In this document: piece by piece, positions 46,198-60,672 of the stretch | Layout: every line of letters starts with the position of its first letter | Numbering within the stretch: the stretch's first letter is position 1 | IMG/VR virus record: IMGVR_UViG_3300042895_001344 | Coordinates: 153,143 to 217,142 of that record | Length of the DNA stretch: 64,000 bases | Reading direction: 5' to 3' (one strand) | Translations under genes and position numbers: made by a program | Notes under the pieces: generated by a model | Told to the model about the DNA's origin: nothing | What the model saw: the letters and a program-made list of their open reading frames with translations, nothing else | The model's database searches: none

Positions 46198-46228
46198 TCC
46201 TCGAGGTTTATACTTCGGGGATTTTTTT
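46198..46228 (+). terminator. Intrinsic terminator at the convergence with the envelope module
   Basis: TCCTCGAGG-TTATA-CTTCGGGGA plus T-run. Confidence 0.75.
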
Positions 46229-47835
46229 TATAATACCATTCTACTACCTATTTGGAAATTACTTAAAAAATCAGAAAATGGTTTGGTGTTTCCACTCATT
46301 TTGTAGTTTGCGGAGAACCCAAATCTCTTACTAATTTTATAATCAAATGCTGCACCTAATAAAAATCCCATATGTCTATTGACTGTTGTTACACCCGTTG
46401 CACTATTATAACTTATAGGTGCAAACATTGTAAATACCTGTGGTGATATTGTTAATTTTTTATTATACTGATAAGGTTTAGTCCAAAACACAATTGCAGA
46501 TGTAGCCATATTGTATTCAAACCCACCCGTCTCATCGTTTTTAAGTAATAGATTAATTACACCCACATTATAACCATATGTTCCTTTTTTTGCAGTTGGT
46601 TTGATGTATGTATATCCTAATAAATTCATATAGTTTCCACCTAAGTACGCAATTCCAGTTCCGTATGAATGTATTGCGTCTAATTGTCCATCTTCGGTCA
46701 TTCCCATTTTTGTTATACCACCCGTCATTACGATTGAACTTAAATTACTATTCACCATCAATCCAGCACTATAACTCACATCACCTGCTAACGATGATTT
46801 ACTAAGTCCTAATGATATAGACGCTAAGAAACTACCCGGAGTTGCTTCCATAACACTTATATCCGATGCCAATAGTGTTGGATTTGTTACCTCTTGTTTT
46901 TTCTTTTTTTCTTCTTCTTTTTTCTTTTCTTCCTCTTTCTTTTTCTCTTCCTCTTTTTTAGCTTCTTCTTTCTTCTCTTCTTCTTTTTTGGCTTCTTCCT
47001 TTTTCTCCTCAGTCTTTTTTTCTTCTGATTTCTTTTCTTCGGTTTTTGCTTCTTCTTTCTTTTCTTCTGTTTTAGCTTCAGTTTTCTTTTCTTCGGTTTT
47101 TTGTTCTGCAGGTTTGTCCGATTTAGTTTCAGCAGGTTTTGCCTCCGCGGGTTTTGCTTCAGCAGGTTTTGCTTCTGTTGATGATGAACTACCACCACTT
47201 GCAGGAGGTGGAGATGAACTACCACTTGCGGGTGGTGGTGCAGCTGCCGGTGGAGGTGCTGCCGTTGGTGGGGGTGCAGTGACTACGGGTGGTGGGGGTG
47301 GTGGTGCAATGTTTATTGGTGGTGGTGTTGCTGCATTTGCCGCTGCAGAACTTGCTGCCGCACTTGCCGATGAACTTGCTGCCGATGATGCCGATGAACT
47401 TGCAGCCTTTGCCGCAGCCTCTGCAGCCGCCTTTGCTGCAGCATCTGCGGCAGCTTTTGCGGCGGCGTCCGATGCCGCTTTTGCTGCGGCATCTGCAGCT
47501 GCCTTTGCGGCTGCGTCAGCGGCAGCTCTTGCTGCAGCATCTGCGGCAGCTCTCGCGGCAGCTTCTTGTGCCAATCTTATATTATCATTTATAGGACAAG
47601 GAGTTGAAAATATTGAATTTACCCATACTTGAAACGCACCACTACTCATGTCAGCTAATGTAACTATTTTAGATTTACCTCTAATAACTGCAACCGTTTG
47701 ATTTTGACCAAAGGGAATTGTTACCACATAGACTTTATTGTCACATGGATCAATATATGTTTGTGTTATAGTACTTTGACTAAACGACTTAACATAAAAA
47801 AATAATATTAGGAGAGAGATAATATATTTTTTCAT
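46228..47835 (-). CDS. Exported protein with a long Ala/Pro/Lys/Glu linker and C-terminal outer-membrane beta-barrel
   Basis: Signal peptide ...VKSFS|Q; AAADAAAK, poly-Pro and EEKK tracts; amphipathic strands; ISPQVF motif. Confidence 0.7.
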   Translation of the reverse strand: MKKYIISLLILFFYVKSFSQSTITQTYIDPCDNKVYVVTIPFGQNQTVAVIRGKSKIVTLADMSSGAFQVWVNSIFSTPCPINDNIRLAQEAAARAAADAAARAAADAAAKAAADAAAKAASDAAAKAAADAAAKAAAEAAAKAASSSASSAASSSASAAASSAAANAATPPPINIAPPPPPPVVTAPPPTAAPPPAAAPPPASGSSSPPPASGGSSSSTEAKPAEAKPAEAKPAETKSDKPAEQKTEEKKTEAKTEEKKEEAKTEEKKSEEKKTEEKKEEAKKEEEKKEEAKKEEEKKKEEEKKKEEEKKKKQEVTNPTLLASDISVMEATPGSFLASISLGLSKSSLAGDVSYSAGLMVNSNLSSIVMTGGITKMGMTEDGQLDAIHSYGTGIAYLGGNYMNLLGYTYIKPTAKKGTYGYNVGVINLLLKNDETGGFEYNMATSAIVFWTKPYQYNKKLTISPQVFTMFAPISYNSATGVTTVNRHMGFLLGAAFDYKISKRFGFSANYKMSGNTKPFSDFLSNFQIGSRMVL

Positions 47836-47841
47836 TATTCG

Positions 47842-48570
47842 TTATTCAAATTTTTCATTATAATCTTTTATTGTAAATGGACAATATACTGAATATCTAA
47901 TGTCTTTTGATAAGTTTTTAGTTACCTCATGTACGTAATTGTATTTTTGATGTTCAATCAACACACATTTATTAAAATTTGGTAAAACTTCTATTTCACC
48001 ATTTTTAGTATAAAGTTTTAATAATGACCCATCATCAAATTTTCTATCGTTGTTTATAAAAAATACAGCAGTAAATAATCTTTCACCATTTGGGTCACTA
48101 TCAAAATGTTTCTTAATAAATGATCCTTCTGGATATACATTTATATGACCAACTAATGAATCTTTAAAATTTGGTTTAATTTTTTTATTAAATAATTCAA
48201 ATAATATGTTTTCGTAACATTTAGATATTAGATCATAAATTCCATTAGTTTTTAACAAACTACTATTATGTGTTAATAAAAAATTAAAATAATCATTTTC
48301 ATTAAATCCATATTGATCATTTAATTTATTTAAAAAACAATAATCTGTATAATTCAATGAATATGAATCTACTATTTTATTGTATCTTATTGGATCTATT
48401 TCTTTAACTTTATTTTCCACATCATTTGACCATTGTAAAAACCCTAACGAGCTATTAATCTCATCAACATTTACGTCAAAATTAATTAATGATGTATTAA
48501 GTTTAACAAACTCATCTTTAGTAAGATAATTTTCTAAATCAAATATTTTATAGTCAAAATCTAAATTCAT
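47842..48570 (-). CDS. 2OG-Fe(II) oxygenase (prolyl-hydroxylase-like)
   Basis: HFD, GSLL, VHEV, RYS. Confidence 0.8.
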   Translation of the reverse strand: MNLDFDYKIFDLENYLTKDEFVKLNTSLINFDVNVDEINSSLGFLQWSNDVENKVKEIDPIRYNKIVDSYSLNYTDYCFLNKLNDQYGFNENDYFNFLLTHNSSLLKTNGIYDLISKCYENILFELFNKKIKPNFKDSLVGHINVYPEGSFIKKHFDSDPNGERLFTAVFFINNDRKFDDGSLLKLYTKNGEIEVLPNFNKCVLIEHQKYNYVHEVTKNLSKDIRYSVYCPFTIKDYNEKFE

Positions 48571-49415
48571 TATTTGTTATTTAAACCTATTGATATTTGT
48601 GTGTATCCTCTTATTGGGTCGGTATCTAATTTTAATGTAACGAATTTAAAATCTTTTATAATACCAACTTTAAATGTGGTAAATGATGAATTTGATTTTG
48701 GAAATGAAATACCACCTAAGTCATCTTTACCTTGCCATCTAATAACTTCATTACCAAATCCTACCATACCATGTATTCCTATTTTACCAATTCTTTTACC
48801 ACCACCAACATAGAAAGTTGATTCTTTTTTCCAATCTTCTTTACTAAGTGGAAAGTCGACATTGTTAATTTGACCATATGGATAATAGCTATTTTGGTCT
48901 ATTGCGTAAGTCATTACATAATCCATAATAAAATATCCTCTCTTGTCACCAATCGTTCCCCAATAAGAAATTTGTTTATTATTTGTATGTCCAAATCCAA
49001 AGGAGGTATAAACACGTTCTTTTCTAATAGTATCTCTTTTTCCACCTTCATATATATGAATTACACTTCTTTGTCTCCATCCGTAATCATCATACCAAAT
49101 ATAAGGCATTGGTTGATACCATCCCCAGTTTCCCCAATAGTAACCAAATTGATTATTTCTATTCCAATTTTGAACACGTACTCTACCACGTTGGTCTGGT
49201 TGTGATTGTTGAGGTTGATTATTTCTCCAACTACTTACATTATTTTGTTGTGGTACAGATGGTTGAACTCTTGTTTGAGTTGATTGTGATGTTTGTGATG
49301 ATGCTGGAACACTTCCACCAGTTTGTCTCCAAGAACTAACTTGGGAATATAACATTATTGTGCAGAATAATATTAATATTAATATTAAACCTGTAACTAA
49401 TAAAACCTTTTTCAT
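48570..49415 (-). CDS. Exported protein, probable small outer-membrane beta-barrel
   Basis: Signal peptide ...MLYS|Q; Gln-rich and aromatic low-complexity region; alternating Gly/aromatic strands. Confidence 0.55.
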   Translation of the reverse strand: MKKVLLVTGLILILILFCTIMLYSQVSSWRQTGGSVPASSQTSQSTQTRVQPSVPQQNNVSSWRNNQPQQSQPDQRGRVRVQNWNRNNQFGYYWGNWGWYQPMPYIWYDDYGWRQRSVIHIYEGGKRDTIRKERVYTSFGFGHTNNKQISYWGTIGDKRGYFIMDYVMTYAIDQNSYYPYGQINNVDFPLSKEDWKKESTFYVGGGKRIGKIGIHGMVGFGNEVIRWQGKDDLGGISFPKSNSSFTTFKVGIIKDFKFVTLKLDTDPIRGYTQISIGLNNK

Positions 49416-49591
49416 ACTGTTTCAGTTAAAATTGTGGTTAGTAAATAACCGGTTATTATTGGGAATGGTGAAAATATTAAAAAAAAGAACAATAACCTCC
49501 AAACCAATGGATCAACATTTGTACGGTGACTTAAACCACTACATACACCAAAAAAAACTTTGTCGTCGTGAACTCTTTTAAACTTTTTCAT
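49412..49591 (-). CDS. pspC: PspC-domain membrane protein (59 aa, absent from the ORF track)
   Basis: Hand translation MKKFKRVHDDKVFFGVCSGLSHRTNVDPLVWRLLFFFLIFSPFPIITGYLLTTILTETV; TGA overlaps the next ATG; TATTTATA 4 nt upstream. Confidence 0.85.
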   Translation of the reverse strand: MKKFKRVHDDKVFFGVCSGLSHRTNVDPLVWRLLFFFLIFSPFPIITGYLLTTILTETV

Positions 49592-49595: not shown

Positions 49596-49603
49596 TATAA
49601 ATA
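49596..49603 (-). promoter_or_regulatory. TATTTATA putative late-promoter motif
   Basis: Just after a terminator and before pspC. Confidence 0.55.
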
Positions 49604-49607: not shown

Positions 49608-49631
49608 AAAAGGGGTTATAAAACCCCTTTT
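49608..49631 (-). terminator. Intrinsic terminator
   Basis: AAAAGGGGTT-4 nt-AACCCCTTTT. Confidence 0.75.
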
Positions 49632-49849
49632 AAACATATTCTATCTAATTCTTCTTGCCTTAAACCTATGGTTGAATCTATTTGTCCTCCGTCGGATAAA
49701 ATGTTTACTAAATAAAGACCAAATTTTTTATCACTTATCTCAATTTCTTGCCCATGTATAAACCCCATATCCATCAATTTTAATCTCATACATGGTGTAC
49801 AATTTTCACAAGGATTATTTTGTGGAACGTCCACTACTTCATATTTCAT
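49616..49849 (-). CDS. feoA: FeoA-like SH3 protein with an N-terminal CxxCxxC
   Basis: RLKLMDMGFIHGQEIEI...IGLRQEE. Confidence 0.7.
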   Translation of the reverse strand: MKYEVVDVPQNNPCENCTPCMRLKLMDMGFIHGQEIEISDKKFGLYLVNILSDGGQIDSTIGLRQEELDRICLKGVL

Positions 49850-50577
49850 TATTTCGTGAATATACCTTTTTTAATCATTCTATCAAGGATGTTAGCACAT
49901 GCAATGTCTAAAGCTTTCTTTGTTGCAATACTAATTGTTGATTGATTGAACTTAATTGGGTCAATGGTCGCATCCGATAAAAGGGTTAACTCTCTTTTTG
50001 TTGTTGCCTCACCTAAACCTGACCCACCAAATACTACACCTGTTTCAGCATCAGTAAATCTAACCTGAAGACCTATACGAGTTACCATATTGTCTTTAAT
50101 ACCGTCTTTTAGGTTAATAGTTTCGTCTTCTGACACCGAGTAGTCATAACACTCAATCGTAACAAAATACTTCGCCAAATTGATTTTACCACGACCGTCT
50201 AATTTATTCTCAGAAATACCCGCAGCAGACGCTTGGAATTGTTTTACCATCCTATTCTTAATTTCTGTCTTATCCTCGGTAAATTTGAATCTATTTAAGT
50301 TTTCAAGGTATTCCATTGAAATGTTAGCAACACCCAAACCAACACGTTTTTCTTTTAACTCAGGATACATTTCATACATCTCATCAGAAATGCCTGCCTT
50401 TAATATTTGAATTGGAATTTGAGGACCGTCGTAATCCATGTAAGCACTTATGTCTCGTTTTTTTTCAAAATCTGCTTTATACTGTTCGGTTTTTGTTGAT
50501 CCTATTGTTTGTCCCATTGCATTATCTGCAATTAAACAGGTTAAAATAAAAATTAAAAATATTATTAAATGTCTCAT
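49849..50577 (-). CDS. CsgG/HfaB-like exported protein
   Basis: Signal peptide ...NAMG|Q; GVANISMEYL.N.NRFKFTE; IGLQVRFTDAETGVV.G.G.G; C-terminal A.KKAL helix. Confidence 0.65.
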   Translation of the reverse strand: MRHLIIFLIFILTCLIADNAMGQTIGSTKTEQYKADFEKKRDISAYMDYDGPQIPIQILKAGISDEMYEMYPELKEKRVGLGVANISMEYLENLNRFKFTEDKTEIKNRMVKQFQASAAGISENKLDGRGKINLAKYFVTIECYDYSVSEDETINLKDGIKDNMVTRIGLQVRFTDAETGVVFGGSGLGEATTKRELTLLSDATIDPIKFNQSTISIATKKALDIACANILDRMIKKGIFTK

Positions 50578-50586: not shown

Positions 50587-51330
50587 TTAAGGGTTCCATT
50601 TATTTAATGCACTTATGTAGTTACTCGTCATATGATCTTTGGCAGTATTACCTGTGAATACAGCTTTAAGATATTCACCAACTCTTTGCCAATCAATCAT
50701 CCATTTTTTAACTTTACCCTCACTATCAATACGTAATTCAGTATTAACGTGGTGATATCCAATATTTGGGGCACGAGTAACAACATCTAAATTATTAACA
50801 ATCCTTAATGATTCAATTGATGATTTATCAAAGTTCTGTTTGAATACTTTATTACCAACTCTTGGACTACCGATAGTACAACATATAATTTTATTTGATT
50901 TATAAATTGAATAAATCTCATATGCACATAAGGTAGAAACTGCAGCTCCCAAACTGTGACCGCAAACAATAATATTATCAACTTCACCCTCCCCACCTAA
51001 TGTGGATAATGCTTTTTCAAATGATTTATAAGTTTCGTCTTTAACAGCGTCCCAAGATGATTTAAATCCAATGTGAACTTTTTCACCATCTTGAACAAAT
51101 GGAACTTTATCAATTGATGCGTCGTTTTGGAAATCCTTTTTAGAAGAACTTCCTCTCCAAACGATATAGATAGATTTATCCTTTGTGGCAACAAATCCTT
51201 GTGTATCTGTTTTTTTATCGTCAATCCATTTAATTAATTTTAATCTTTGTGCTTTAAAATCAATGTCTTTTTGTTCTGAATATACTTTCTCGGTTAAACC
51301 GACATTGTATAGTATTTCGTTTTTTGTCAT
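50587..51330 (-). CDS. Class-3 lipase (alpha/beta hydrolase)
   Basis: VWRGS, VHIGF, GHSLG, TIGSPRVG, VNNLDVVTRAP, Y.HV, DH. Confidence 0.92.
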   Translation of the reverse strand: MTKNEILYNVGLTEKVYSEQKDIDFKAQRLKLIKWIDDKKTDTQGFVATKDKSIYIVWRGSSSKKDFQNDASIDKVPFVQDGEKVHIGFKSSWDAVKDETYKSFEKALSTLGGEGEVDNIIVCGHSLGAAVSTLCAYEIYSIYKSNKIICCTIGSPRVGNKVFKQNFDKSSIESLRIVNNLDVVTRAPNIGYHHVNTELRIDSEGKVKKWMIDWQRVGEYLKAVFTGNTAKDHMTSNYISALNKWNP

Positions 51331-51354: not shown

Positions 51355-51591
51355 TTACTGTCTTGCTGGCCATATACCACGAGTGGCTATTATGTATTTC
51401 ATACCATCCATAGGTGGTTCCATTTTAGGTACCGCAAATAAATTTGGTGTTGCTCCGTATCTATCTTGCAGTAATACATATAACGCCTCATTTTCCCTTA
51501 TGTTTAATAATTGTCCGTTGCATTCTACATATCCTTGAGGAGCGTAGCCTCCTGCAAATAATTTAATTGCCCCAATTAATTCTTCTTCCAT
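51355..51591 (-). CDS. Stand-alone phage tail-collar domain protein
   Basis: IGAIKLFAGGYAPQGYVECNGQLL...ALYVLL...YG; YIIATRGIWP. Confidence 0.85.
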   Translation of the reverse strand: MEEELIGAIKLFAGGYAPQGYVECNGQLLNIRENEALYVLLQDRYGATPNLFAVPKMEPPMDGMKYIIATRGIWPARQ

Positions 51592-51594: not shown

Positions 51595-52668
51595 TTATTG
51601 TGTTTTTGTTTTAGATTGATCACCCTTCTTTAAAAATATATCAAATATTGTTTTAGGACTGTATTCTACAAGTAATATTAAACCCTTCCTCAACGTAGAG
51701 TTTTTTACAACGTGATTTAAAATATCTTTAATAACCTCTTTAATGGCGAAATTTTTAGTGTCAAAATATGTTCCATCAAAATATCTTGGACTTGTTCCCT
51801 CACCACCTGGTGAACCGTGATGAGCACCTATAGAGGTACGCCAATAATCAGCATGATTTTGCCATTCAGGAACTGAAACCAATTCAGGTGAATCAAAAAA
51901 TAAATTCCACGATAATACATTACCCTTTTGTAACATATTACCAGTACCTAAGTTAAAAAGATTTAAAAAGTATTGATTAAACTTATCTAATTTGTGATCA
52001 CTTGTTGTTACCATTCCTCCTATTTCTACATTGATATGTCCTGTACTATATGCTTCTTCCTTTATTGCAAATTCAGGATTTTTAAATCTTGGTGATAAAC
52101 CCTTTCCGAGTTGAAATATAGGTTCTTTAGGATTTCCTGGTAGATGTGTTAAAACACGAATAGCATTTTCTTTGTTGATAGGATACTTACGAGAACTGTA
52201 TTTTAATAATGGCCAAATTGCTCTTAATAGACCACCTTGATTTTCACCTGGTGTTAACCAAATTTTTCCCTCAACCATCATATCCGCAGCAATTTCCTTT
52301 GTGTCTTCATTAACCCATCCTCTTTGTCCCGTAACTGTTACTTCCACATTGATACAAATCTCATCTCCAATCCACATCCCTTGTTGAGGACAGATTATGG
52401 AATAAATTCTACCTTCATTGGTATATCCTATTCTTGAAATATAAGGAGCAAATTGTACATAACAACGTTTTGGGTCTTTTTCCCCATTTAGGGTATTCCA
52501 ACTAAACATTGGCCATTTAACACCCCATTGTCTTTGTAGTAAATTAATGTTATCCATATTACCCAACATAGGTAATGAGGTTAAATCTGTGGTAGGATAT
52601 AGCATTTTCTTTTGTTTTTCAGATGGAAAACCACCTTGCCATCCCGTAGGAATTTGTTCGTTTGTCAT
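51595..52668 (-). CDS. Hypothetical protein
   Basis: 357-aa ORF; TATTTATA at 52679-52686 upstream. Confidence 0.7.
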   Translation of the reverse strand: MTNEQIPTGWQGGFPSEKQKKMLYPTTDLTSLPMLGNMDNINLLQRQWGVKWPMFSWNTLNGEKDPKRCYVQFAPYISRIGYTNEGRIYSIICPQQGMWIGDEICINVEVTVTGQRGWVNEDTKEIAADMMVEGKIWLTPGENQGGLLRAIWPLLKYSSRKYPINKENAIRVLTHLPGNPKEPIFQLGKGLSPRFKNPEFAIKEEAYSTGHINVEIGGMVTTSDHKLDKFNQYFLNLFNLGTGNMLQKGNVLSWNLFFDSPELVSVPEWQNHADYWRTSIGAHHGSPGGEGTSPRYFDGTYFDTKNFAIKEVIKDILNHVVKNSTLRKGLILLVEYSPKTIFDIFLKKGDQSKTKTQ

Positions 52669-54030: not shown

Positions 54031-54399
54031 TTAAATTTTATTAAAATCTGTAATTCCTAACATATTACCCGCAACATCGTATAATGCAATCCTATACGCT
54101 GAAGATGGTAAAGCGGATGTATACACCCTTAAAATGTTATCACCAACCTTAACCTCACTTGTTGATTTTGATACCACTCTATTGGAAATATCAAAAATCT
54201 TAACGGTTACAGTTTGAGCAACATCACTTTTTATGTTCATTGCAACTTCATTTGTTATAAATGAAGTTTCTAATTTTAATCCCACTGAACTTGAGATTTT
54301 AAGGTTGTCACTAATCACTTGTGGTTGCATTGGTATGTCTACTTTTCTACATCCAACAAGTAAGATTAATCCAAAGAGTACGAGAGATACTTTTTTCAT
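54031..54399 (-). CDS. Lipoprotein consisting of a T9SS-CTD-like Ig domain
   Basis: LVGC lipobox; VTVKIFDISNRVV...G.N.L.V.TSALPSSAYRIAL. Confidence 0.6.
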   Translation of the reverse strand: MKKVSLVLFGLILLVGCRKVDIPMQPQVISDNLKISSSVGLKLETSFITNEVAMNIKSDVAQTVTVKIFDISNRVVSKSTSEVKVGDNILRVYTSALPSSAYRIALYDVAGNMLGITDFNKI

Positions 54400-54411: not shown

Positions 54412-54765
54412 TTAATTTATAATTATTCTTGTTTTACCTATTTGATTATTATTTTGATCCTTTAACACGACACTTAGGTTTTTTGTCGGTAAAGTATTAG
54501 TAAATATTTTAAGAGAGTTTAATCCTACTTTACCAGTAAACCTTTCCCTTGATACTACTTGGTTTTGAACCGTATCAATCATTGTTAAAGTATATACTCC
54601 TCCTGTAGTTAAATTAATATTAATAACATCCCCGTTTTTTACCTTATTTTCAGATAAGGAGAAAAATTCCACATTTGTCGGTGACACAGGTGTAAACGGA
54701 ACCATTTTTTTGCACGATATTATAAAAACCATACAACACAATAATATAATTTTGATACGTTTCAT
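54412..54765 (-). CDS. Lipoprotein paralog with a T9SS-CTD-like domain
   Basis: IISC lipobox; YTLTMID...VV...G.NSLKIFTNTLP. Confidence 0.55.
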   Translation of the reverse strand: MKRIKIILLCCMVFIISCKKMVPFTPVSPTNVEFFSLSENKVKNGDVININLTTGGVYTLTMIDTVQNQVVSRERFTGKVGLNSLKIFTNTLPTKNLSVVLKDQNNNQIGKTRIIIN

Positions 54766-54768: not shown

Positions 54769-55662
54769 TTAAAATTGAAAGTTTGTTCCTATCATAAATA
54801 GAATTGGATTACTCTTTTTATACCCAACCGATTCACTTAATTTATTCCAAGTTGTGTTATATCTAACATTAGTATTCAATACAAATTTTTTAGTTATTTT
54901 CCAATCAATAGATGTACCATAATATAAGTCCAAATTGAAATCATCTACATATGCTAAATCCGATTCAGTCCCATCTTTGAATACTTTGTAGATATCACTC
55001 ATTGCAAATATTTGTGGTGAGATGTTTACTCTCTTTGTTTTGAATGTATACGTATACATTGCCATACCTCTATAACTAATTTGACTTGATGATGGCATTT
55101 GTGGATATATTAAATCTTTAAAATCACCATTTTCATCTACTATATATTTTCCTTCCCATTGACCTTGATAACTTCCCCAAAACGATTTTGACGCAATCAC
55201 ACTATAACCAAATGTTCCAAACTTTTTAGTTCTGAATACATCAATGAATGATAGAGAAATATCTTTTTGAAAATCAAAATCGGTTGAATAGAATGATTGT
55301 AATGTAGTAGTTCTTGTATTCGTATTTCTACTGAAACCATAACCCACACCATAGTAGTTCCATATTGGATTTATTGATGATGCGAATGAGTGACCCCATT
55401 TACCATTTTTAGATGATTTACTATATCCTAAATTTAAGGTAGTAGATACTTGTTTTCCAATTACACCTACTGATAAATTTGAGGATGAAAGAACATCTTT
55501 TGAAAAATCAATATATGACTCTAATATACCTAAATTATTCCAATCACCACTTTCTCCAAATAATTCTTTTGGTGATAGTTGTAAGGTATCTGGTTTTACA
55601 ATTTGTGCGTTTGTAACAAATGTTGTCAAAATTAGTGACAGAATTAATAATAGTTTTTTCAT
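54769..55662 (-). CDS. Outer-membrane beta-barrel protein
   Basis: Signal peptide ...VTNA|Q; amphipathic strands; ISPQIF; C-terminal Phe (GTNFQF). Confidence 0.75.
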   Translation of the reverse strand: MKKLLLILSLILTTFVTNAQIVKPDTLQLSPKELFGESGDWNNLGILESYIDFSKDVLSSSNLSVGVIGKQVSTTLNLGYSKSSKNGKWGHSFASSINPIWNYYGVGYGFSRNTNTRTTTLQSFYSTDFDFQKDISLSFIDVFRTKKFGTFGYSVIASKSFWGSYQGQWEGKYIVDENGDFKDLIYPQMPSSSQISYRGMAMYTYTFKTKRVNISPQIFAMSDIYKVFKDGTESDLAYVDDFNLDLYYGTSIDWKITKKFVLNTNVRYNTTWNKLSESVGYKKSNPILFMIGTNFQF

Positions 55663-58271
55663 TAATTTATTTTTATTTTTAATGATTTTCCATCTTTATT
55701 AACTGCGTCCGTTGAACCTATTGAAATTAAACCCAATATGTTATCCAATTTTGTGTTTGACGAAAATGAAATCTTATATGTTGTTGTCTTATCTAAACTT
55801 GTACTACCATCACTTACCAAAGAACCTAAATTAATGTAATTACCCTTGTTGGTTGCATAGTTGGTAGGTGAACCTTTTGTGGTAAATTGTATTCCTTTAA
55901 AATTTAAGACCGAATTATCGTAGTTTAATTGAAATTGAGTTCCTACCACGTTTTGTTGTAATGGGTCAAATGTGATGTAAGCATAAACACTATCACCAAT
56001 TACTTCGGTCATAATAGATGCGTTGATGTCAGTTGATATTGGTGTACTCATTGATGTTCTAACTGTCATCGTTGTGATATTATTTGATGGAGGAGTTGCC
56101 GAATGTGATAAGTTTACATCACCTTTCCAACTAACAGCCAAATCGTAGTTATAACTTATTACATTATCTAATAAACTAAAATTATAAGTTTTTCCTGCAA
56201 AATTTTGAAAAGAACTCCAAGTTGACTTACCAATTTTATTATAAATTGAATCAGGTATCAAACGTATTGTATTATCCAAAGTATAATTACTAACTAAGTT
56301 TTGTACACCCGTTAAATTTTGTAATAATTTGAAACAATCCGCTTCATTAAATAAACCATCATCATTTACATCTGCGTTTTTATATTGAATTCCGTAAGTA
56401 AACTCATTACCACTTTGATTTCCAAATATACCACCATTTGCCAATTCCTTAAATGCCAAATACACATCTGATACTGTTACGATACTATTATACAAAGTTT
56501 TTAATTGTGTACTATCATATTCTTGTAATTCCATTTTGTGTTGTTTGAACGCACCTTGTTGGGTAAGTCCAATACCACATGCAAATGCATAGTCGGTATT
56601 TGAACCATTCATATTTCTAATATATTGATTATATGCAGAAGTTCCATCGGTTACTTTTGTTAATGGAGATGGAACAGTATATTGTGCCCAACCATTATTG
56701 TCATGTGATGTATATGTAACAGGCCCATCATACGCATCTAATATTTTTACATTTGATATTTTCGTTGGGTCTATACTTCCAACTTGTCTCATATCAATTA
56801 ACAATCTACTATTACCATTTAACCAACTTGCATTTGGATTTGTATAAGACCACTCTACCCCACCCGGAGATATAGTTGCTTTGTATGATGCAGGTGCCGA
56901 TACGAATTGGTAACTTAATCCCCATCCACCATAACCCGATGTTGATACTCCATTACGAGTTGAACCAACATATTCACTTAACCCCTGTACTACTTTAATA
57001 TAAACTTCTTTTGTTTGTCCGTCTGATATTACACCAGCATGTACCGCTGCGGCTGGAATATATGAATCACTTGTATAGATATCGGTTCCCCATATTGCTC
57101 CACCTGTTGTACCTGTTATTGTTATTCTATATATCTTACCAATATCCGATTCATTAAATTGTTGCATATCGGATGTTCCTGCTGTTAATGGAATACCAGT
57201 TGTATAAATCTTTGAAGTATCTATTTGATTTGAAAGAAATACTTTACCCAAACCACTCAATGATTTATAACCATCCGCCGCTGCCCAATTTGAATATGTG
57301 TCGTTTCTTTTGAATATCTGTGCTAAGAATTTTGTTTTATCTATTGAAGTATTAAACTTAAATCCAAATAATGCTTTTATAGTTTCTCCGTTTGAATGTG
57401 TTACTGAATTGGTATAGAACTCCGTAAATGTTGCATCATCGGGATTAGACCAAGTTCCATATTCAATTACATATGGGTTACTCCAATTGTTTGATAAGTC
57501 ATTCCATTGATTACCATTCCATTTTGTTACTGCATAATCCTCACTATGATTATATCCGTTTGGTTCACCATTTGCCCAATTATTATACACACCTGGTCGG
57601 TTTCCGGCAGTTGGTCCGTTGGATGTTTTCATCACAGTCCCCTTTTCAGGACCCGCATCAATTACCCAAGTTCCATCTATAACTTCATCTGTTGCTGCAA
57701 ACCATATATTTGATTGTGGTACATTAGCTTGAATAAATAAATCTTCCGATGATGATGTTAGTGTTAATAGATAACCCGTCTGTCCTTTGAATGTTGTTGT
57801 TAACGCAATTGCTCTTGCGTTTGTATAAGTTGTACCGGTTGTTACGGGTTTGTAAAAGTGACCATTTACTCCATTGAAATAATATCCTGGTTGATTAACA
57901 GTTGCGGCCACTGAAATATTAATATCACCAATTACTGTTCCTGTGTTTATTTTTAGAGACGCTAACGCAGTATTAATACTTGCCATTGTTCCAGTTACCA
58001 CTAAACGAGTTTTATTACCACTTAAAGTAAATCCACTTGCTGCCGTTAAACCCGTTGTTGTGTTTAATACGAATGTTGTACCTGATGGTGGATTGACTAA
58101 ACTTATAGAAGCAAGTAAAGTAGATGTTGCACCAAATCCACTTAATGAAAATCCACTAGCGTCTTGTCCTGTGGTATTCACAGTAAATGATTTAGGGTCT
58201 GGAGCCGTTACTGACTGACCAAACCCTAAAAATGATATAAATAAAAATAATACTACTAATAGTTTCTTCAT
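55662..58271 (-). CDS. Exported adhesin-like protein: C-type lectin + LCCL + dockerin-like + cohesin-like domains
   Basis: Signal peptide ...LGFG|Q; GYLLTLTS.SE, WANGEPN, WNDL; IWGTDIYTSDS.I.AAAVHAG; ADVNDDG; GTQFQLNYD. Confidence 0.8.
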   Translation of the reverse strand: MKKLLVVLFLFISFLGFGQSVTAPDPKSFTVNTTGQDASGFSLSGFGATSTLLASISLVNPPSGTTFVLNTTTGLTAASGFTLSGNKTRLVVTGTMASINTALASLKINTGTVIGDINISVAATVNQPGYYFNGVNGHFYKPVTTGTTYTNARAIALTTTFKGQTGYLLTLTSSSEDLFIQANVPQSNIWFAATDEVIDGTWVIDAGPEKGTVMKTSNGPTAGNRPGVYNNWANGEPNGYNHSEDYAVTKWNGNQWNDLSNNWSNPYVIEYGTWSNPDDATFTEFYTNSVTHSNGETIKALFGFKFNTSIDKTKFLAQIFKRNDTYSNWAAADGYKSLSGLGKVFLSNQIDTSKIYTTGIPLTAGTSDMQQFNESDIGKIYRITITGTTGGAIWGTDIYTSDSYIPAAAVHAGVISDGQTKEVYIKVVQGLSEYVGSTRNGVSTSGYGGWGLSYQFVSAPASYKATISPGGVEWSYTNPNASWLNGNSRLLIDMRQVGSIDPTKISNVKILDAYDGPVTYTSHDNNGWAQYTVPSPLTKVTDGTSAYNQYIRNMNGSNTDYAFACGIGLTQQGAFKQHKMELQEYDSTQLKTLYNSIVTVSDVYLAFKELANGGIFGNQSGNEFTYGIQYKNADVNDDGLFNEADCFKLLQNLTGVQNLVSNYTLDNTIRLIPDSIYNKIGKSTWSSFQNFAGKTYNFSLLDNVISYNYDLAVSWKGDVNLSHSATPPSNNITTMTVRTSMSTPISTDINASIMTEVIGDSVYAYITFDPLQQNVVGTQFQLNYDNSVLNFKGIQFTTKGSPTNYATNKGNYINLGSLVSDGSTSLDKTTTYKISFSSNTKLDNILGLISIGSTDAVNKDGKSLKIKIN

Positions 58272-58274: not shown

Positions 58275-59927
58275 TTATTCAACAATCAAATTAATCTTGT
58301 TTCCGTTTCCATCAACCGCGTCAGCTAAAACTGTATAAAATAAACCCGCCGTATTTGTTATGGTTTCTTTCGGTATAAAAGTTAATTTGTAAGGTGTCCC
58401 TATTTTAATTCTACCAGTTTTCATTTGATCCATTGAACCGAATGTTAATCTACCATCTCCATTTGTTGAGAAGTTAGTTACGTTTGGACCGGCGTCAAAT
58501 GATATATTATCAAATGTTAATTTTGAATTGTCATATTGTAAGATTACCTCTAATCCCGCTAATCCGTCTTTTGTTAATGTTCCCGTTAATACAACTTTAC
58601 CATTAACAATTGTAGAGTTTAATCCTAATGTTGCCTTTTCAATTGTTGGTGTATATGACATTGATTGAACTGAAAATGATTTGATTGATGAGGTACTTTT
58701 TTCATTAATTGAGTTTAAGTAAGTTCCTGCTGCAATTCTACTTGCGATTACATCAGGGTCAGATGAATGAGACCAATCCAAATCACCACCCCATGCGTAT
58801 ACCATATCTACCGATTGATTTGATGATGTTACTTTTGTTTTGTAAGTAGGTACACCATCTAACCAACTTTGATTTAATAAACCACTATACCATTTGAATA
58901 AACCACTATTTGTACTCAATGGAATCCATGCACTATCTTTTACATTAGCGATACCCATTACATATGCAAACATATAATATGAATCACTTTCACTAAACAC
59001 ACTTTTACTCTTTGTAATTTGACCTATATTCTTTTGTAATTGTGGTCTTGTAAAATAAGTTTTTACACCCGCGATATCCGTTTGTGAAATACCTAAAAAT
59101 GCTTTATATGCGTCTGATACTGTTATAATGTTATTCATAAAAGTTTTTCCTGTTGCACCATACATCCACACCGCCAAACTATCTCCCACTTTCACTTCTG
59201 TTGTAAATGTCGCCTCACCACTTGCATCTAATACTTTTGTTGCAATTGGTGTTACTGTAAAATCAATTGTACCATCTGTTTTTATTGGAAATAATGCAAC
59301 ACTGTGTGCGGTAATATCATATCCTGTTGGGAATAAAACTCTTAGTTTGAACTGAGACGTATTACCAACAACATTTGTTAAAGACATTGTACCTGGATCA
59401 GTTGTAATTGGTGTAATGTATGCACTTGTTGCATCAATTGAATATGATAAGTCTAATTTATGAATGTCGGTATACGCACCCAAATCTTTGATTACATATT
59501 TTTGAGTTGCAACATCTCCGTTGATAGATGCATCGGTTCTTTGAACAGTTAATTGACCAACATTCCAATCTGCGTTGGCTGCGTAACCCCATGGAGATAT
59601 TAGATATTGTGCATATAAATCTTTAGCTGTAATACTATTTGCTGCACTTGAAGTAAATTTATAAGACGACCAACCTGTGTAGAATGTTTGAACTGATGTT
59701 CCTTGTGAGAACGTCGTTGAAACATATGAAAGTGCCTTATTGTTAAATTGATATCTCAACCAAAAATAACGAGGCGTGGTTGTACCTCTCGCAACCGTGT
59801 ATTTAACTGAAACCGTATCACCAACCTTTAACCCTGTTGTAGGTGTCACAGATTGGTTGACAGTTAATTGTGCATTTGTTGCTATGGATATTACTAGTAT
59901 TCCAAGTAGCGTTAATAGTTTTTTCAT
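58275..59927 (-). CDS. Exported protein with dockerin-like and cohesin-like domains, paralog of 55662..58271
   Basis: Signal peptide ...ATNA|Q; ITVSDAY; GGDLDWSHS; GLEVILQYDNSKLTF. Confidence 0.7.
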   Translation of the reverse strand: MKKLLTLLGILVISIATNAQLTVNQSVTPTTGLKVGDTVSVKYTVARGTTTPRYFWLRYQFNNKALSYVSTTFSQGTSVQTFYTGWSSYKFTSSAANSITAKDLYAQYLISPWGYAANADWNVGQLTVQRTDASINGDVATQKYVIKDLGAYTDIHKLDLSYSIDATSAYITPITTDPGTMSLTNVVGNTSQFKLRVLFPTGYDITAHSVALFPIKTDGTIDFTVTPIATKVLDASGEATFTTEVKVGDSLAVWMYGATGKTFMNNIITVSDAYKAFLGISQTDIAGVKTYFTRPQLQKNIGQITKSKSVFSESDSYYMFAYVMGIANVKDSAWIPLSTNSGLFKWYSGLLNQSWLDGVPTYKTKVTSSNQSVDMVYAWGGDLDWSHSSDPDVIASRIAAGTYLNSINEKSTSSIKSFSVQSMSYTPTIEKATLGLNSTIVNGKVVLTGTLTKDGLAGLEVILQYDNSKLTFDNISFDAGPNVTNFSTNGDGRLTFGSMDQMKTGRIKIGTPYKLTFIPKETITNTAGLFYTVLADAVDGNGNKINLIVE

Positions 59928-59929
59928 AG

Positions 59930-60577
59930 TTATTTAACAAATAATTTAGTTATTAATTTATCCGCCGATTTTTTTAAGGCGTTACTAAGTGACGTTTGAT
60001 TAAATTGACCTCCCTCATCAACAATTAATGTTGACATTGATATTTCTGAAGATGATTCTTCGACCATTATTTCCTTTTCTTTTTTACCATCCTTATATAA
60101 AGTTCCTTTCATACGAATGACAACTTCTTCTTCATTTTTGTGAAAAACAGAAATGTTCTTTTTTGTTGTAAGAACATCTAAATAAATGATTTGAACTTTT
60201 AATTTGTATGGGGCTGAAGGTGTTAAATCATAACCCTTTTCTTGTAAGAATTCTTCCAATGTATTTTTTACACCGAAAGCTAAATTTCTATTACCTGCCA
60301 ATTTACCCATCTTAACTTCATTGGTAACACTCTCCACCCAAATATGGTCTTCAGCCACATAGAATATATTTTCAGGTGAGTTCTTGAATGTACCATCAAT
60401 CCTCCACGAAATCCAATTTGAGATGTCTCTTGTTATTTCTCTTTGGCCTGAAAATTCCAAAACCGCCATGGATATACCGAATATCATTCCAAATATTACC
60501 CATGATATCGCAAAGTATAAAAAACCTAAAAAGATTTTTTCTTTAATATTAATTGATAGTGTTCTTAATTTTTCCAT
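59930..60577 (-). CDS. Membrane-anchored CsgG-like protein (paralog of 49849..50577)
   Basis: N-terminal TM helix; LAFGVKNTLEEFL; FNQTSLSNALKK. Confidence 0.55.
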   Translation of the reverse strand: MEKLRTLSINIKEKIFLGFLYFAISWVIFGMIFGISMAVLEFSGQREITRDISNWISWRIDGTFKNSPENIFYVAEDHIWVESVTNEVKMGKLAGNRNLAFGVKNTLEEFLQEKGYDLTPSAPYKLKVQIIYLDVLTTKKNISVFHKNEEEVVIRMKGTLYKDGKKEKEIMVEESSSEISMSTLIVDEGGQFNQTSLSNALKKSADKLITKLFVK

Positions 60578-60664
60578 ACTGTTCTGAGTTTACAATTCCC
60601 TCAGAACCACATATTAATATAATACATAATATCTTGAGAGAGATACGTTTATTTTTTGTCTGTC

Positions 60665-60672
60665 TATAAATA
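60665..60672 (-). promoter_or_regulatory. TATTTATA putative late-promoter motif heading the envelope operon
   Basis: 87 nt upstream of the ATG at 60577. Confidence 0.5.

What the first reader, a model, noticed from the sequence alone, without database searches (positions are those of the whole stretch)
46228..60672. Top candidate: 14.4-kb phage-encoded outer-membrane surface-display/secretion module
Seen: 18 contiguous minus-strand genes in three units, each with TATTTATA at its start and, for the first two, a terminator at the end (60665 to 52692; 52679 to 49608; 49596 to 46228). Most products are envelope-targeted: six signal peptides, two lipoproteins and several TM proteins. They include CsgG-like proteins, beta-barrels, adhesin-like cargo, T9SS-CTD-like domains, PspC, FeoA and a lipase. 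Established: CsgG forms an outer-membrane secretion pore, and cohesin/dockerin pairs assemble surface complexes. Inference: late in infection the phage builds its own export and anchoring apparatus to put lectin adhesins on the host surface. Possible roles are cell aggregation to bring in new hosts, receptor masking, grazing avoidance or vesicle-associated release. Virion proteins of tailed phages do not normally carry Sec signals, so this is unlikely to be a tail module. I do not know of a described phage system like it.
Basis: partly seen in the sequence, partly recalled or inferred. Interest (0 to 1): 0.92.

Follow-up and report, generated by a model that had tools for sequence, protein, structure and literature searches.

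The report
Conserved phage cell-envelope lectin module
A large T4-like phage of Bacteroidota carries a conserved late-gene block that sends sugar-binding proteins, outer-membrane barrels, lipoproteins and CsgG/LpoB-fold proteins into the host envelope, probably to decorate or remodel the infected cell's surface, and no such phage system has been described.

Summary
There are 18 contiguous minus-strand genes, three TATTTATA sites and two terminators. I count six Sec signals, two lipoproteins and several membrane proteins.

Comparison with about 90 related viral loci splits the block in two.
- **Conserved core (9-12 genes), collinear in 65 of 81 loci:** g01, g02, g03, (g04), g05, g06, g07, g08, (g09), g13, (g16), g18.
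- **Unrelated inserts (6 genes):** the 357-aa protein, the tail-collar fragment, lipase, FeoA, PspC and the 2OG oxygenase.

What the core encodes:
- g13 has the CsgG/LpoB fold, but no lipid anchor and no membrane hairpins, so a pore is not supported.
- g18 ends in a confident 12-stranded outer-membrane barrel, and g04 is its paralogue.
- g02 and g03 are secreted proteins with cohesin-like C-termini. The g03 sugar-binding head swaps between C-type lectin and PA14 across phages.

In distant relatives, including the cultured Flavobacterium phage immuto, the cohesin protein ends in a bona fide T9SS sorting domain. In this clade that domain is missing, and two weakly CTD-like lipoproteins follow instead, always two for two.

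Surface display of lectins is therefore plausible, probably through the host T9SS rather than a phage-built pore. The function is untested. The module is phage-specific, abundant in freshwater metagenomes and undescribed in the literature I searched.

The parts
60665..60672 (-). TATTTATA promoter-like motif heading unit 1, 87 nt before the g01 start
   Evidence: The same motif precedes portal, TerL and other virion genes, and immuto gp013.
59930..60577 (-). g01 (215 aa): an N-terminal membrane segment fused to a small CsgG/LpoB/YajG-like periplasmic domain. Core gene.
   Evidence: Lipoprotein_16 24.7 bits against a cutoff of 25. Short orthologues of 157-172 aa have cleavable signals. It shares an FNQxS..A.KK C-terminal motif with g13. 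The bacterial L106 paralogue hits both the g01 and g13 profiles.
58275..59927 (-). g02 (550 aa): secreted protein with a dockerin-like segment and a C-terminal cohesin-like domain (nt 58278-58646). Core gene.
   Evidence: Signal peptide ending NAQ. Profile A6 hits PDB cohesins, 4ums at E 1e-4. Present in 90 loci.
55662..58271 (-). g03 (869 aa): secreted modular lectin. Domains: C-type lectin (nt 57468-57782, with EPN at 236 and WND at 256), LCCL (56922-57101), dockerin-like segment (about 56232-56438) and cohesin-like C-terminus (55665-56051). Core gene.
   Evidence: The head swaps to PA14 in other phages, and orthologues fall into three length classes.
54769..55662 (-). g04 (297 aa): signal peptide plus an outer-membrane beta-barrel ending ..NFQF. 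Paralogue of the g18 barrel. Variable (46 loci).
   Evidence: hhalign A5 against A4: 95% probability, E 1.8e-8 over 202 columns. 844 clusters, all hypothetical.
54412..54765 (-). g05 (117 aa): lipoprotein with a beta-sandwich domain that weakly resembles T9SS CTDs. Core gene.
   Evidence: Invariant lipobox Cys. Paralogue of g06. DUF3244 and Por_Secre_tail hits are below threshold.
54031..54399 (-). g06 (122 aa): lipoprotein, paralogue of g05. Core gene.
   Evidence: DUF3244 20.2 bits, Por_Secre_tail 15.7 bits, TIGR04183 16.8 bits, all below cutoff. Always two lipoproteins with two cohesin proteins, in 66/66 loci.
53684..53998 (-). g07 (104 aa): single-pass inner-membrane protein with a variable Pro/Lys-rich periplasmic tail and a conserved C-terminal peptide ..DEFKEEAPKW. 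Core gene.
   Evidence: Retained next to g13 in the most distant viral loci.
52998..53666 (-). g08 (222 aa): membrane protein with three DxDxDG loops and a CxH..CxxC motif. Core gene.
52720..52968 (-). g09 (82 aa): protein with two membrane segments and a charged C-terminus, so shaped like a holin. Present in 48 loci.
   Evidence: No family hit.
52692..52716 (-). Terminator-like hairpin plus T-run ending unit 1
52679..52686 (-). TATTTATA motif heading unit 2, 10 nt before g10
51595..52668 (-). g10 (357 aa): no signal peptide, no known family. Insert, not core.
   Evidence: Found with g11 and g12 but without the module in L085, L086, L089 and L095. No PDB, Pfam or PHROG hit.
51355..51591 (-). 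g11 (78 aa): phage tail-collar domain fragment. Insert.
   Evidence: Collar 52.1 bits. Present in 16 loci.
50587..51330 (-). g12 (247 aa): class-3 lipase with no signal peptide. Insert.
   Evidence: Lipase_3 95.9 bits, phrog_21992. Present in 29 loci.
49849..50577 (-). g13 (242 aa): secreted CsgG/LpoB-superfamily protein. The most conserved core gene.
   Evidence: AF2 model pLDDT 74.8. Foldseek top hit CsgG at E 6e-7 with TM about 0.5, then PelC, GNA1162, FlgT and LptE. Distant relatives hit Pfam CsgG at 45.8 and 28.6 bits, and LpoB. 5668 clusters at 90% identity.
49616..49849 (-). g14 (77 aa): FeoA-domain protein. Insert.
   Evidence: FeoA 25.0 bits against a cutoff of 23. Present in 23 loci.
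49608..49631 (-). Terminator-like hairpin plus T-run ending unit 2. Its upstream end overlaps the 3' end of g14 (49616-49849).
49596..49603 (-). TATTTATA motif heading unit 3, 4 nt before g15
49412..49591 (-). g15 (59 aa): PspC-domain membrane protein. Insert.
   Evidence: PspC 54.6 bits. Present in 17 loci. Not called by the public gene caller.
48570..49415 (-). g16 (281 aa): secreted protein, Q/N/W-rich, with a beta-rich C-terminal part. Fold unknown. Variable (39 loci).
   Evidence: Not related to the g18 barrel and no PDB hit.
47842..48570 (-). g17 (242 aa): cytoplasmic 2OG-Fe(II) oxygenase. Insert.
   Evidence: 2OG-FeII_Oxy_3 37.5 bits. Present in 8 loci.
46228..47835 (-). g18 (535 aa): signal peptide, a 65-aa N-domain with two Cys, a 228-aa A/K/E/P-rich spacer and a C-terminal 12-stranded outer-membrane barrel (nt 46231-46896). 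Core gene.
   Evidence: AF2 model pLDDT 88.5. Foldseek hits FapF (TM 0.66), NanC, OmpG and the autotransporter beta-domains EspP, BrkA and NalP. Immuto gp018 has the same layout with an S/T/G-rich spacer. Composition.

Best explanation
**What it is.** This is a phage-specific cell-envelope module, probably expressed late, in a large T4-like phage of Bacteroidota. Nine to twelve of the 18 genes form the module. The other six are unrelated inserts.

**Shown**
- The phage makes two Sec-exported modular proteins, g02 and g03. g03 has an exchangeable sugar-binding head (C-type lectin here, PA14 elsewhere). Both have a constant dockerin-like segment and a C-terminal cohesin-like domain.
- Alongside these it makes two small lipoproteins (g05, g06) and two CsgG/LpoB-fold periplasmic proteins (g01, g13).
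- It also makes a 12-stranded outer-membrane barrel that carries a small domain on a long spacer (g18), with a free-standing paralogue (g04).
- Two or three inner-membrane proteins complete the set (g07, g08, g09).

**Inferred**
- The lectin proteins end up on or in the outer membrane of the infected cell.
- They get there through the host type IX secretion system rather than a phage-made pore.
  - In distant relatives the cohesin protein carries a real T9SS sorting domain.
  - In this clade that domain appears to have split off as the two lipoproteins, one per cohesin protein. These would act as adaptor and lipid anchor.
- The CsgG/LpoB-fold proteins, the barrels and the inner-membrane proteins form an accompanying envelope complex whose role is not determined.
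- The biological pay-off is unknown. Masking of surface glycans or receptors, cell-cell or cell-particle adhesion, and envelope stabilisation are all possible.
For: **Phage identity.**

**Conservation.**
- Core genes are present in 68-90 of about 90 IMG/VR loci, on contigs up to 335 kb.
- 65 of 81 loci are collinear and on one strand.

**Envelope targeting.** Variable leader sequences precede conserved mature N-termini that start with Gln, and the lipobox Cys is invariant.

**Lectin heads.**
- Lectin_C with EPN and WND motifs, plus LCCL.
- Lectin_C and PA14 swap between orthologues.

**Cohesin.**
- Profile hit to PDB cohesins.
- Pfam Cohesin scores above cutoff in orthologues L075, L101, L103 and L104 and in immuto gp015.

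**T9SS link.**
- Por_Secre_tail scores: 34.6 bits in immuto gp015 (TIGR04183 44.8), 44.5 in L103 and 43.1 in L104.
- Distribution is complementary: a fused CTD with no lipoprotein, or no CTD with a lipoprotein immediately downstream.
- In this clade the count is 2 cohesin proteins to 2 lipoproteins in 66/66 loci.
- The L101 lipoprotein scores 20.1 bits on Por_Secre_tail, matched up to its C-terminus.

**Folds.** g13 matches CsgG/LpoB. g18 is a 12-stranded barrel, and g04 is homologous to it.

**Timing.** The upstream motif is shared with virion genes.

**Phage-specific.**
Against: - Nothing here shows where the proteins end up or what they do.
- In this clade no protein reaches the curated T9SS CTD threshold.
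- Profile comparison of g05/g06 with true CTDs is weak: 25% and 2% probability.
- A lipoprotein made only of a CTD has no precedent known to me.
- Dockerin likeness is below significance, with E 0.02-0.9.
- 'Late' rests only on a shared motif, not on expression data.
- The roles of g01, g13, g18, g04, g07 and g08 are not explained by T9SS export.
- Their strict conservation suggests they do something essential that this account leaves open.
- g09 is shaped like a holin, and g07 has the layout of an inner-membrane spanin, so part of the block could serve lysis.
Confidence: 0.45

Rival explanations
1. The phage builds its own outer-membrane exporter. A CsgG-like ring (g13, g01) together with FapF-like or autotransporter-like 12-stranded barrels (g18, g04) translocates g02/g03 as unfolded chains and anchors them by cohesin-dockerin contacts.
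For: - g13 matches CsgG best and belongs to that superfamily.
- The g18 barrel matches FapF best by TM-score (0.66), and also autotransporter beta-domains.
- FapF and CsgG are both channels for unfolded secreted proteins (established knowledge).
- In this clade the cargo lacks a T9SS domain.
- The components are strictly co-conserved.
Against: - g13 has a signal-peptidase-I signal rather than a lipobox.
- Its mature form is about 40 aa shorter than what I recall for mature CsgG (about 262 aa).
- The tip of its only long hairpin (SVSEDETINLKDGIKDN) is charged.
- Bacterial relatives use the domain as a periplasmic module on caspases and kinases.
- Matches to 12-stranded barrels are generic: NanC, OmpG and PcoB score alike.
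- No plug helix or coiled coil is predicted before the barrel.
- Relatives clearly use the T9SS.
Confidence: 0.15
2. Part or all of the core is the phage's lysis and outer-membrane-disruption apparatus. g09 (and g08) would act as holin and antiholin. g07 together with g05/g06, or with the tethered g18, would be a spanin-like bridge across the periplasm.
For: - g09 is 82 aa with two membrane segments and a charged C-terminus.
- g07 is a type-II inner-membrane protein with a conserved C-terminal peptide, encoded right after two outer-membrane lipoproteins.
- The block carries the late-type motif.
- No spanin, holin or endolysin is recognised elsewhere in the window.
Against: - No holin, spanin or endolysin family hit was found in Pfam or PHROGs.
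- The g07 periplasmic tail is low-complexity, not coiled-coil.
- g05/g06 are 100-aa beta-sandwich proteins with no extra Cys, unlike o-spanins.
- Lysis does not explain lectin, PA14 and cohesin proteins with swapping heads.
- g09 is missing in about half of the loci.
Confidence: 0.1
3. The module works inside the periplasm to keep the envelope intact during a long infection by a large phage. The LpoB/CsgG-fold proteins would modulate peptidoglycan synthases. The tethered barrel and g07 would link the membranes, and the lectins would bind peptidoglycan or glycan intermediates.
For: - Relatives of g13 also hit LpoB, the PBP1b activator family.
- The g18 spacer (A/K/E/P-rich, 228 aa) resembles periplasm-spanning TolA/TonB linkers.
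- Stress genes lie nearby or inside the block: PspC, a ClpB-like gene and HSP20.
Against: - In relatives the cohesin protein has a T9SS sorting domain, which means export beyond the periplasm.
- EPN-type C-type lectin and PA14 heads that swap between phages look like binders of variable surface glycans.
- There is no direct evidence for any contact with peptidoglycan enzymes.
Confidence: 0.12
4. It is a tail, baseplate or other virion module.
For: - Weak PHROG tail-fibre hits for g18 (E 1.4e-3) and g11.
- The promoter motif is shared with virion genes.
Against: - There are six conserved cleavable signal peptides, two lipoproteins and true outer-membrane barrels.
- The g18 PHROG hit falls in its low-complexity spacer.
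- g11 is an insert.
Confidence: 0.02
5. It is a host chromosomal island recently captured by this phage.
For: The single components belong to bacterial superfamilies, and one bacterial-looking locus (L106, an Ignavibacteriales MAG) has a g13-like lipoprotein beside a paralogue and a barrel.
Against: - Only 7 hits were found in 185,579 species genomes, all in MAGs. Several are contigs of 110-250 kb that carry the rest of the module.
- The module is conserved across divergent phages down to 38-55% identity, including a cultured one.
- Its base composition matches the rest of the window.
Confidence: 0.03

Closest known systems
CsgG curli secretion channel (Pfam PF03783), with the related LpoB and PelC lipoproteins
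   Same: g13 shares the fold (Foldseek E 6e-7). Through intermediate relatives it also shares the family signal (CsgG 45.8 bits, LpoB 30.2 bits). g01 is a smaller paralogue, about the size of PelC, LptE or YajG.
   Different: g13 has no lipid anchor, no two hydrophobic membrane hairpins and no curli genes nearby. It is encoded by a phage. Its bacterial relatives are fused to caspases or kinases.
T9SS type-A CTD cargo of Bacteroidota (Por_Secre_tail / TIGR04183)
   Same: Related phages (immuto gp015, L103, L104) encode a Sec signal, a cohesin domain and a CTD that scores above the curated cutoffs. The inferred hosts are T9SS-bearing Bacteroidota.
   Different: In this window the cohesin proteins lack the CTD. 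Only two small lipoproteins resemble it weakly. Phage-encoded T9SS cargo has not been described in the papers I could search.
Cellulosome-type cohesin-dockerin assemblies
   Same: The C-terminal domains of g02 and g03 match cohesin structures and the Pfam Cohesin model. An upstream segment (DVNDDGLFNEADCFKLLQNL) looks like one dockerin calcium loop with its helix.
   Different: No enzymes are attached. The dockerin likeness is below significance and only one canonical loop is present. The context is a Gram-negative envelope and a phage.
FapF amyloid transporter and type Va autotransporter beta-domains (12-stranded barrels)
   Same: g18 has an N-terminal domain, a long linker and a C-terminal 12-stranded barrel. 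FapF gives the best TM-score (0.66).
   Different: No coiled coil, plug helix or autotransporter family hit is seen. The N-domain is only about 65 aa. The linker is a low-complexity spacer whose composition differs between clades.
Phage-encoded envelope accessory genes (lambda Lom and Bor, T5 Llp, Cor, seroconversion operons)
   Same: These are phage genes whose products go to the host envelope and change its surface properties.
   Different: Those are one to three genes, mostly in temperate phages. Here 9-12 co-conserved genes sit in a large virulent-type T4-like phage behind a virion-type promoter motif.
Two-component spanins with a holin
   Same: The gene order is outer-membrane lipoproteins, then a type-II inner-membrane protein, then small membrane proteins.
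   Different: There is no coiled coil, no proline-rich short lipoprotein, no family hit and no adjacent endolysin.

Membership tests
CsgG family (PF03783) | Sequence match to the family model | tested here: inconclusive
   g13 itself gives no Pfam hit at E<=0.1. Relatives reached by its profile do hit CsgG: L106 28.6 bits, P0258 45.8, P0265 32.5 and P0158 27.2, against a cutoff of 20.8.
CsgG family (PF03783) | CsgG-like alpha/beta fold | tested here: met
   AF2 model with pLDDT 74.8. The top 13 Foldseek PDB hits are all CsgG (E down to 6e-7, TM 0.43-0.50), followed by PelC at rank 14.
CsgG family (PF03783) | N-terminal lipobox Cys (outer-membrane lipoprotein) | tested here: not met
   All 23 aligned orthologues have a leader ending in Gln with no Cys at the cleavage site. 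The bacterial relative L106 does have a lipobox.
CsgG family (PF03783) | Two amphipathic membrane-spanning beta-hairpins that form the 36-stranded pore | tested here: not met
   The low-confidence loops are 11 and 14 aa and hydrophilic. The tip of the one long hairpin (137-176) is SVSEDETINLKDGIKDN.
CsgG family (PF03783) | Nonameric ring | not testable with these tools
   No multimer prediction was available.
T9SS type-A CTD cargo | C-terminal sorting domain above the curated cutoff (PF18962 27 bits; TIGR04183 23 bits) | tested here: not met
   In the window, g06 scores 15.7 and 16.8 bits, and g02, g03 and g05 give no TIGR04183 or window-copy Pfam hit; among 36 g05/g06 orthologues, 10 gave sub-threshold Por_Secre_tail hits. 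The feature is met in relatives: immuto gp015 34.6 and 44.8, L103 44.5, L104 43.1.
T9SS type-A CTD cargo | Sec signal peptide and a host that has a T9SS | tested here: inconclusive
   Signal peptides are present. The host is inferred to be Bacteroidota from Gln-first mature ends, the host of the closest isolate (Flavobacterium) and the MAG bin names. The host itself is unknown.
Cohesin (PF00963) | Match to the family model or to solved cohesins | tested here: met
   g03 scores 21.5 bits, below the 24.1 cutoff. Orthologues pass: L075 24.4, L101 31.0, L103 36.8, L104 37.8 and immuto gp015 36.7. The family profile hits the cohesin 4ums at E 1e-4 and other cohesins.
Dockerin (PF00404) | Two tandem calcium-loop-plus-helix segments | tested here: inconclusive
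   There is one canonical loop with helix at g03 634-653, preceded by a helix without a loop at 598-610. In the profile search, 7 of 10 weak PDB hits are dockerins, but with E 0.14-0.9. No Pfam hit.
C-type lectin domain (PF00059) | Family match plus the calcium/sugar motifs EPN (or QPD) and WND | tested here: met
   24.0 bits against a cutoff of 22.6. EPN at 236-238 and WND at 256-258. Weak PDB hits to CEL-I, MBP and SP-D over the same stretch.
Outer-membrane beta-barrel | Closed barrel with an even number of strands, a signal peptide and a hydrophobic or aromatic C-terminal residue | tested here: met
   g18 C-terminus: 12 long strands at pLDDT 88.5, with all top hits being OM barrels. It ends in L, or in F in some orthologues. 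g04 ends in F and is homologous to it.
FapF / type Va autotransporter | Plug or linker helix in the barrel lumen, with a coiled-coil or passenger domain upstream | tested here: not met
   The model shows no helix before strand 1. No family hit. The upstream part is a low-complexity spacer plus a 65-aa domain.
Two-component spanin / holin | i-spanin with a periplasmic coiled coil, a short Pro-rich o-spanin lipoprotein, and a holin family match | tested here: not met
   No Pfam or PHROG hit for g05 to g09 beyond the weak CTD-type ones. The g07 tail is low-complexity. g05/g06 are about 100-aa beta-rich domains.

The most novel reading that the evidence does not exclude
Large phages of Bacteroidota hijack the host type IX secretion system late in infection. 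They use it to coat the infected cell with a self-assembling scaffold of cohesin/dockerin-like lectins whose sugar-binding heads swap between phages.

In this clade the T9SS sorting domain would have been split from the cargo into lipoprotein adaptors (g05/g06). These would carry the folded cargo out piggy-back and then serve as its lipid anchor. A dedicated set of CsgG/LpoB-fold proteins, a tethered 12-stranded barrel and an inner-membrane protein would organise the site.

This would be the first phage-encoded surface-display system and the first split T9SS signal.
Probability: 0.22. Interest if true: 0.88.

Novelty: new variant of a known kind. Interest (0 to 1): 0.7.

Why it matters
Phages are known to alter host surfaces with single accessory genes. 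A 9-12-gene envelope module, strictly conserved in an abundant clade of large freshwater Bacteroidota phages, would be a different scale of host remodelling. The g13 family alone has 5668 clusters at 90% identity.

If the lectins are displayed on the cell, several things follow:
- The phage controls what the infected cell sticks to, or which glycans it hides.
- This bears on superinfection, loss of progeny to cell debris, particle attachment and carbon flow in lakes.
- The T9SS link would add viruses to the users of that secretion system, and could reveal a split form of its sorting signal.
- It offers compact parts for surface display in Flavobacteria.

A cultured, non-pathogenic model already exists: Flavobacterium phage immuto on Flavobacterium sp. 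LMO8. The question is therefore directly testable.

Tried and rejected
**Searches that gave nothing or little**
- PHROG scans of all 18 proteins gave almost nothing.
- Nucleotide search of GenBank phages found no relative.
- Sequence-only PDB searches found nothing useful for g13, g02, g10 or the g16 profile.
- NCBIfam gave no names for the window proteins.
- Word-indexed protein searches for g13 and g04 returned only close, unnamed relatives.
- Six literature searches and one paper look-up found no description of the module.

**Ideas tested and rejected**
- g16 as a third member of the g18/g04 barrel family: hhalign probability 0.1%.
- The g05/g06 profile detecting the true CTDs in related loci: no hits.
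- hhalign of g05/g06 against two true CTDs: only 2% and 25% probability.
- TATTTATA as a module-specific signal: rejected, because it is genome-wide.
- Treating the 18 genes as one functional unit: rejected by synteny.
- A virion or tail reading, and a recent host island: both rejected (see rivals).

**Not done**
- No endolysin was seen in the window from the precomputed Pfam labels. Only 64 kb of a genome of at least 217 kb is in view.
- I did not search g09 for holin relatives, because the chance of a named hit seemed low.

Full report
**1. What the window is**

The 64-kb window is part of a large T4-like phage.
- It encodes a Gp23-type major capsid protein (25362-27119), a T4-type portal (30704-32545), a gp21-like prohead protease, a large terminase (32600-34378) and a T4 RNA ligase 1 homologue.
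- It also encodes a ClpB-like chaperone, HSP20, PhoH, dUTPase and ribosomal protein S21.
- The same DNA occurs in IMG/VR contigs of 91 and 217 kb, and relatives reach 335 kb.
- The closest isolates by capsid protein are Microcystis phage Mel-JY01 (about 38% identity) and Flavobacterium phage vB_FspM_immuto (about 39% identity). Only immuto also carries the module.
- There is no nucleotide-level relative in GenBank phages.
- A Bacteroidota host is inferred from three things:
  - signal peptides that all cleave before Gln;
  - T9SS sorting domains in relatives;
  - the bin names of mis-binned contigs (Flavobacterium, Sediminibacterium, 'Bacteroidetes').

**2. The observation**

All the stated features are present.
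- There are 18 contiguous minus-strand ORFs between 46228 and 60577.
- TATTTATA lies at 60665, 52679 and 49596.
- Terminator-like hairpins lie at 52716-52692 and 49631-49608.

The motif is real but not particular to this block.
- 16 of the 21 copies in the window are intergenic, although only 9.3% of the window is non-coding.
- 13 lie within 100 nt upstream of a same-strand gene, including portal, terminase, the protease and the scaffold-position gene. They usually sit only 4-35 nt before the ATG.
- It marks the first gene of the equivalent module in immuto. In related loci it is found before g01 and g13 but never before internal genes.

I read it as the phage's late-type promoter element. That reading is an inference from the company it keeps, not from expression data.

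The count of targeting signals also holds.
- Six signal peptides: g02, g03, g04, g13, g16, g18.
- Two lipoproteins: g05, g06.
- Membrane proteins: g01, g07, g08, g09, g15.
- Orthologue alignments show variable leaders in front of conserved mature ends, and an invariant lipobox cysteine.

**3. Core genes and inserts**

I ran tblastn of the 18 proteins against 98 related viral loci.
- Core set, present in 68-90 loci: g01, g02, g03, g05, g06, g07, g08, g13, g18.
- Variable members: g04 (46 loci), g09 (48) and g16 (39).
- Rare genes: g10 (25), g11 (16), g12 (29), g14 (23), g15 (17) and g17 (8).
- The cassette g10-g11-g12(-g14) also occurs in loci that lack the module (L085, L086, L089, L095). It is therefore a separate mobile insert.
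- Among 81 loci with at least six core genes, 65 are fully collinear on one strand.

So are a tail-collar fragment, a 2OG oxygenase and an unknown 357-aa protein.

**4. The parts**

*g13*
- It is the most conserved gene, at 72-98% identity across most loci and about 49% in the most divergent (L049/L075). It has 5668 clusters at 90% identity in the large protein collection, all unnamed.
- A profile search of 1.84 billion representatives finds only 288 relatives.
- An AlphaFold model (pLDDT 74.8) matches CsgG best (E 6e-7, TM about 0.5). PelC, GNA1162, FlgT and LptE follow.
- Distant relatives found by the profile score above the Pfam CsgG cutoff and also hit LpoB.
- Those relatives are bacterial lipoproteins fused to caspase domains, or the extracytoplasmic end of Ser/Thr kinases.
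- g13 itself has no lipobox and no hydrophobic hairpins. Its one long hairpin has a charged tip.
- So the fold claim is right, but the pore inference does not follow.

*g01*
- It is a smaller paralogue. It gives a borderline YajG-type hit and shares a C-terminal motif with g13. A bacterial intermediate hits both profiles.
- Its N-terminal membrane segment exists as a separate small gene next to g13 in other phages. This fusion/fission pattern links these proteins functionally.

*g18*
- It has a signal peptide, a 65-aa N-domain with two cysteines, a 228-aa spacer rich in Ala, Lys, Glu and Pro, and a C-terminal domain.
- The C-terminal domain models confidently (pLDDT 88.5) as a 12-stranded outer-membrane barrel.
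- The best structural matches are FapF (TM 0.66), NanC, OmpG and the autotransporter beta-domains.
- Immuto gp018 has the same layout with an S/T/G-rich spacer. The spacer therefore acts as a tether of variable composition.

*g04 and g16*
- g04 is a free-standing paralogue of the g18 barrel (hhalign 95%, E 2e-8).
- g16 is secreted and beta-rich, but it is not detectably related and its fold is unknown.

*g02 and g03*
- Both are secreted multidomain proteins.
- g03 has a C-type lectin domain with the EPN and WND sugar/calcium motifs, an LCCL domain, a dockerin-like calcium loop with helix, and a C-terminal cohesin-like domain.
- g02 shares the last two modules.
- g03 orthologues fall into three length classes. 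The head is C-type lectin in some phages and PA14 in others, and LCCL occurs only in the longest class.
- A constant C-terminal 'handle' with an exchangeable glycan-binding head is the signature of an adhesin or lectin under diversifying pressure.

*g05 and g06*
- They are paralogous lipoproteins.
- They hit DUF3244 and the T9SS sorting-domain models only weakly (18 and 10 of 36 orthologues, best E 3e-4).

*g07, g08 and g09*
- g07 is a single-pass inner-membrane protein with a variable tail and a conserved C-terminal peptide.
- g08 has three DxDxDG loops and a Cys/His motif.
- g09 is shaped like a holin.

**5. The T9SS link**

In immuto, gp015 is a signal peptide plus cohesin plus a sorting domain that passes both curated cutoffs (Pfam 34.6 bits, TIGR04183 44.8 bits). 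The same architecture occurs in L103 (44.5 bits) and L104 (43.1 bits).

The arrangement differs between clades in a complementary way.
- Where the sorting domain is fused (L103, L104), no lipoprotein lies between the cohesin gene and g07.
- In the intermediate clade (L101, L102) the cohesin protein lacks the sorting domain. A 118-123-aa lipoprotein follows it directly. Its C-terminus reads like a sorting domain, and L101 scores 20.1 bits matched to the very end.
- In the window's clade there are two cohesin proteins and two such lipoproteins in 66 of 66 loci.

The simplest reading is that the sorting domain and the lipoproteins are evolutionary counterparts, related by gene fission or fusion. 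That remains an inference, because direct profile comparison is weak.

It does show that the wider family uses the host T9SS to put a cohesin protein outside the cell.

**6. Is it borrowed from the host?**

- A pattern scan of 185,579 species genomes with the g13 alignment gave seven hits, all in MAGs.
- Several are 110-250-kb contigs that carry the rest of the module, so they are probably mis-binned phage.
- One (L106, Ignavibacteriales, 38% identity) has a bacterial-looking neighbourhood. It has a g13-like lipoprotein, a paralogue, a transglutaminase/TPR protein, a cyclase and a barrel. It has no lectin or cohesin genes.
- The scan used only two peptide patterns, so distant bacterial copies could have been missed.
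- On present evidence the module is phage-specific.

**7. Verdict**

- The block is real, conserved and envelope-directed. I found no description of it.
- The best account is late production of modular lectin/cohesin proteins destined for the outer membrane or cell surface, most likely via the host T9SS. An accompanying complex of CsgG/LpoB-fold proteins, barrels and inner-membrane proteins has an open role (confidence about 0.45).
- A virion role and a recent host island are unlikely.
- The purpose is unknown. Receptor or glycan masking would fit the swapping heads, but it is a guess.

Noticed in passing
window 39843-42412: The phage encodes a ClpB-like double-AAA chaperone (40325-42412, +) next to an HSP20 gene (39843-40199, -) and two small KTSC-domain genes. 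A 269-nt stretch inside the chaperone gene (40704-40972) is 78.5% identical to DNA of Staphylococcus phage SA 1306 Kay.
   Followed up: no
window about 29780-29971 (+): A ribosomal protein S21 gene sits inside the head-morphogenesis block, between the portal-side genes and the prohead protease (precomputed Pfam).
   Followed up: no
window-wide, for example 32550, 34384, 22516, 49596: The (G/A)TATTTATA motif often ends only 4-5 nt before the ATG. If it is a -10-type element, this implies leaderless or nearly leaderless transcripts. The same spacing is seen before immuto gp013 (L099 10515).
   Followed up: partly
L013 15629-19077: In a related 209-kb viral contig the module has gained a TonB-dependent-receptor-like gene (Plug 35.1 bits, OMP_b-brl_3 88.4 bits) and a 400-aa lipoprotein between g08/g09 and g13. 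The site seems to collect envelope genes.
   Followed up: no
window 50587-52668 and 49616-49849; L085, L086, L089, L095: The cassette g10 (unknown, 357 aa), g11 (tail-collar fragment), g12 (class-3 lipase) and sometimes g14 (FeoA) travels as a unit. It occurs in other phage loci without the envelope module.
   Followed up: partly
window 59930-60577; L012 5706-5915, L041 6430-6645, L062 5266-5493, L077 4436-4666: The N-terminal membrane segment of g01 is a separate 70-77-aa gene placed just upstream of g13 in other phages, where g01 instead has a cleavable signal peptide.
   Followed up: partly
window 52998-53666: g08 carries three DxDxDG calcium-loop-like motifs (163, 174, 196) and a CxH...CxxC motif (190, 205). 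Which side of the membrane this region faces is unclear.
   Followed up: no
window 46887-47632: Several long ORFs on both strands over g18 (for example 46988-47632, +) are artefacts of its low-complexity Ala/Lys/Glu/Pro spacer.
   Followed up: yes
window 60773-61555 and 47842-48570: Two 2OG-dependent dioxygenase-type genes sit at or beside the module: PhyH in the divergent upstream gene, and 2OG-FeII_Oxy_3 in g17. Neither has a signal peptide.
   Followed up: no
window 54412-54765: The public gene call for g05 starts at an internal Met (97 aa) and so drops the lipoprotein signal, which is conserved in all orthologues. g15 (PspC, 59 aa) is not called at all.
   Followed up: yes
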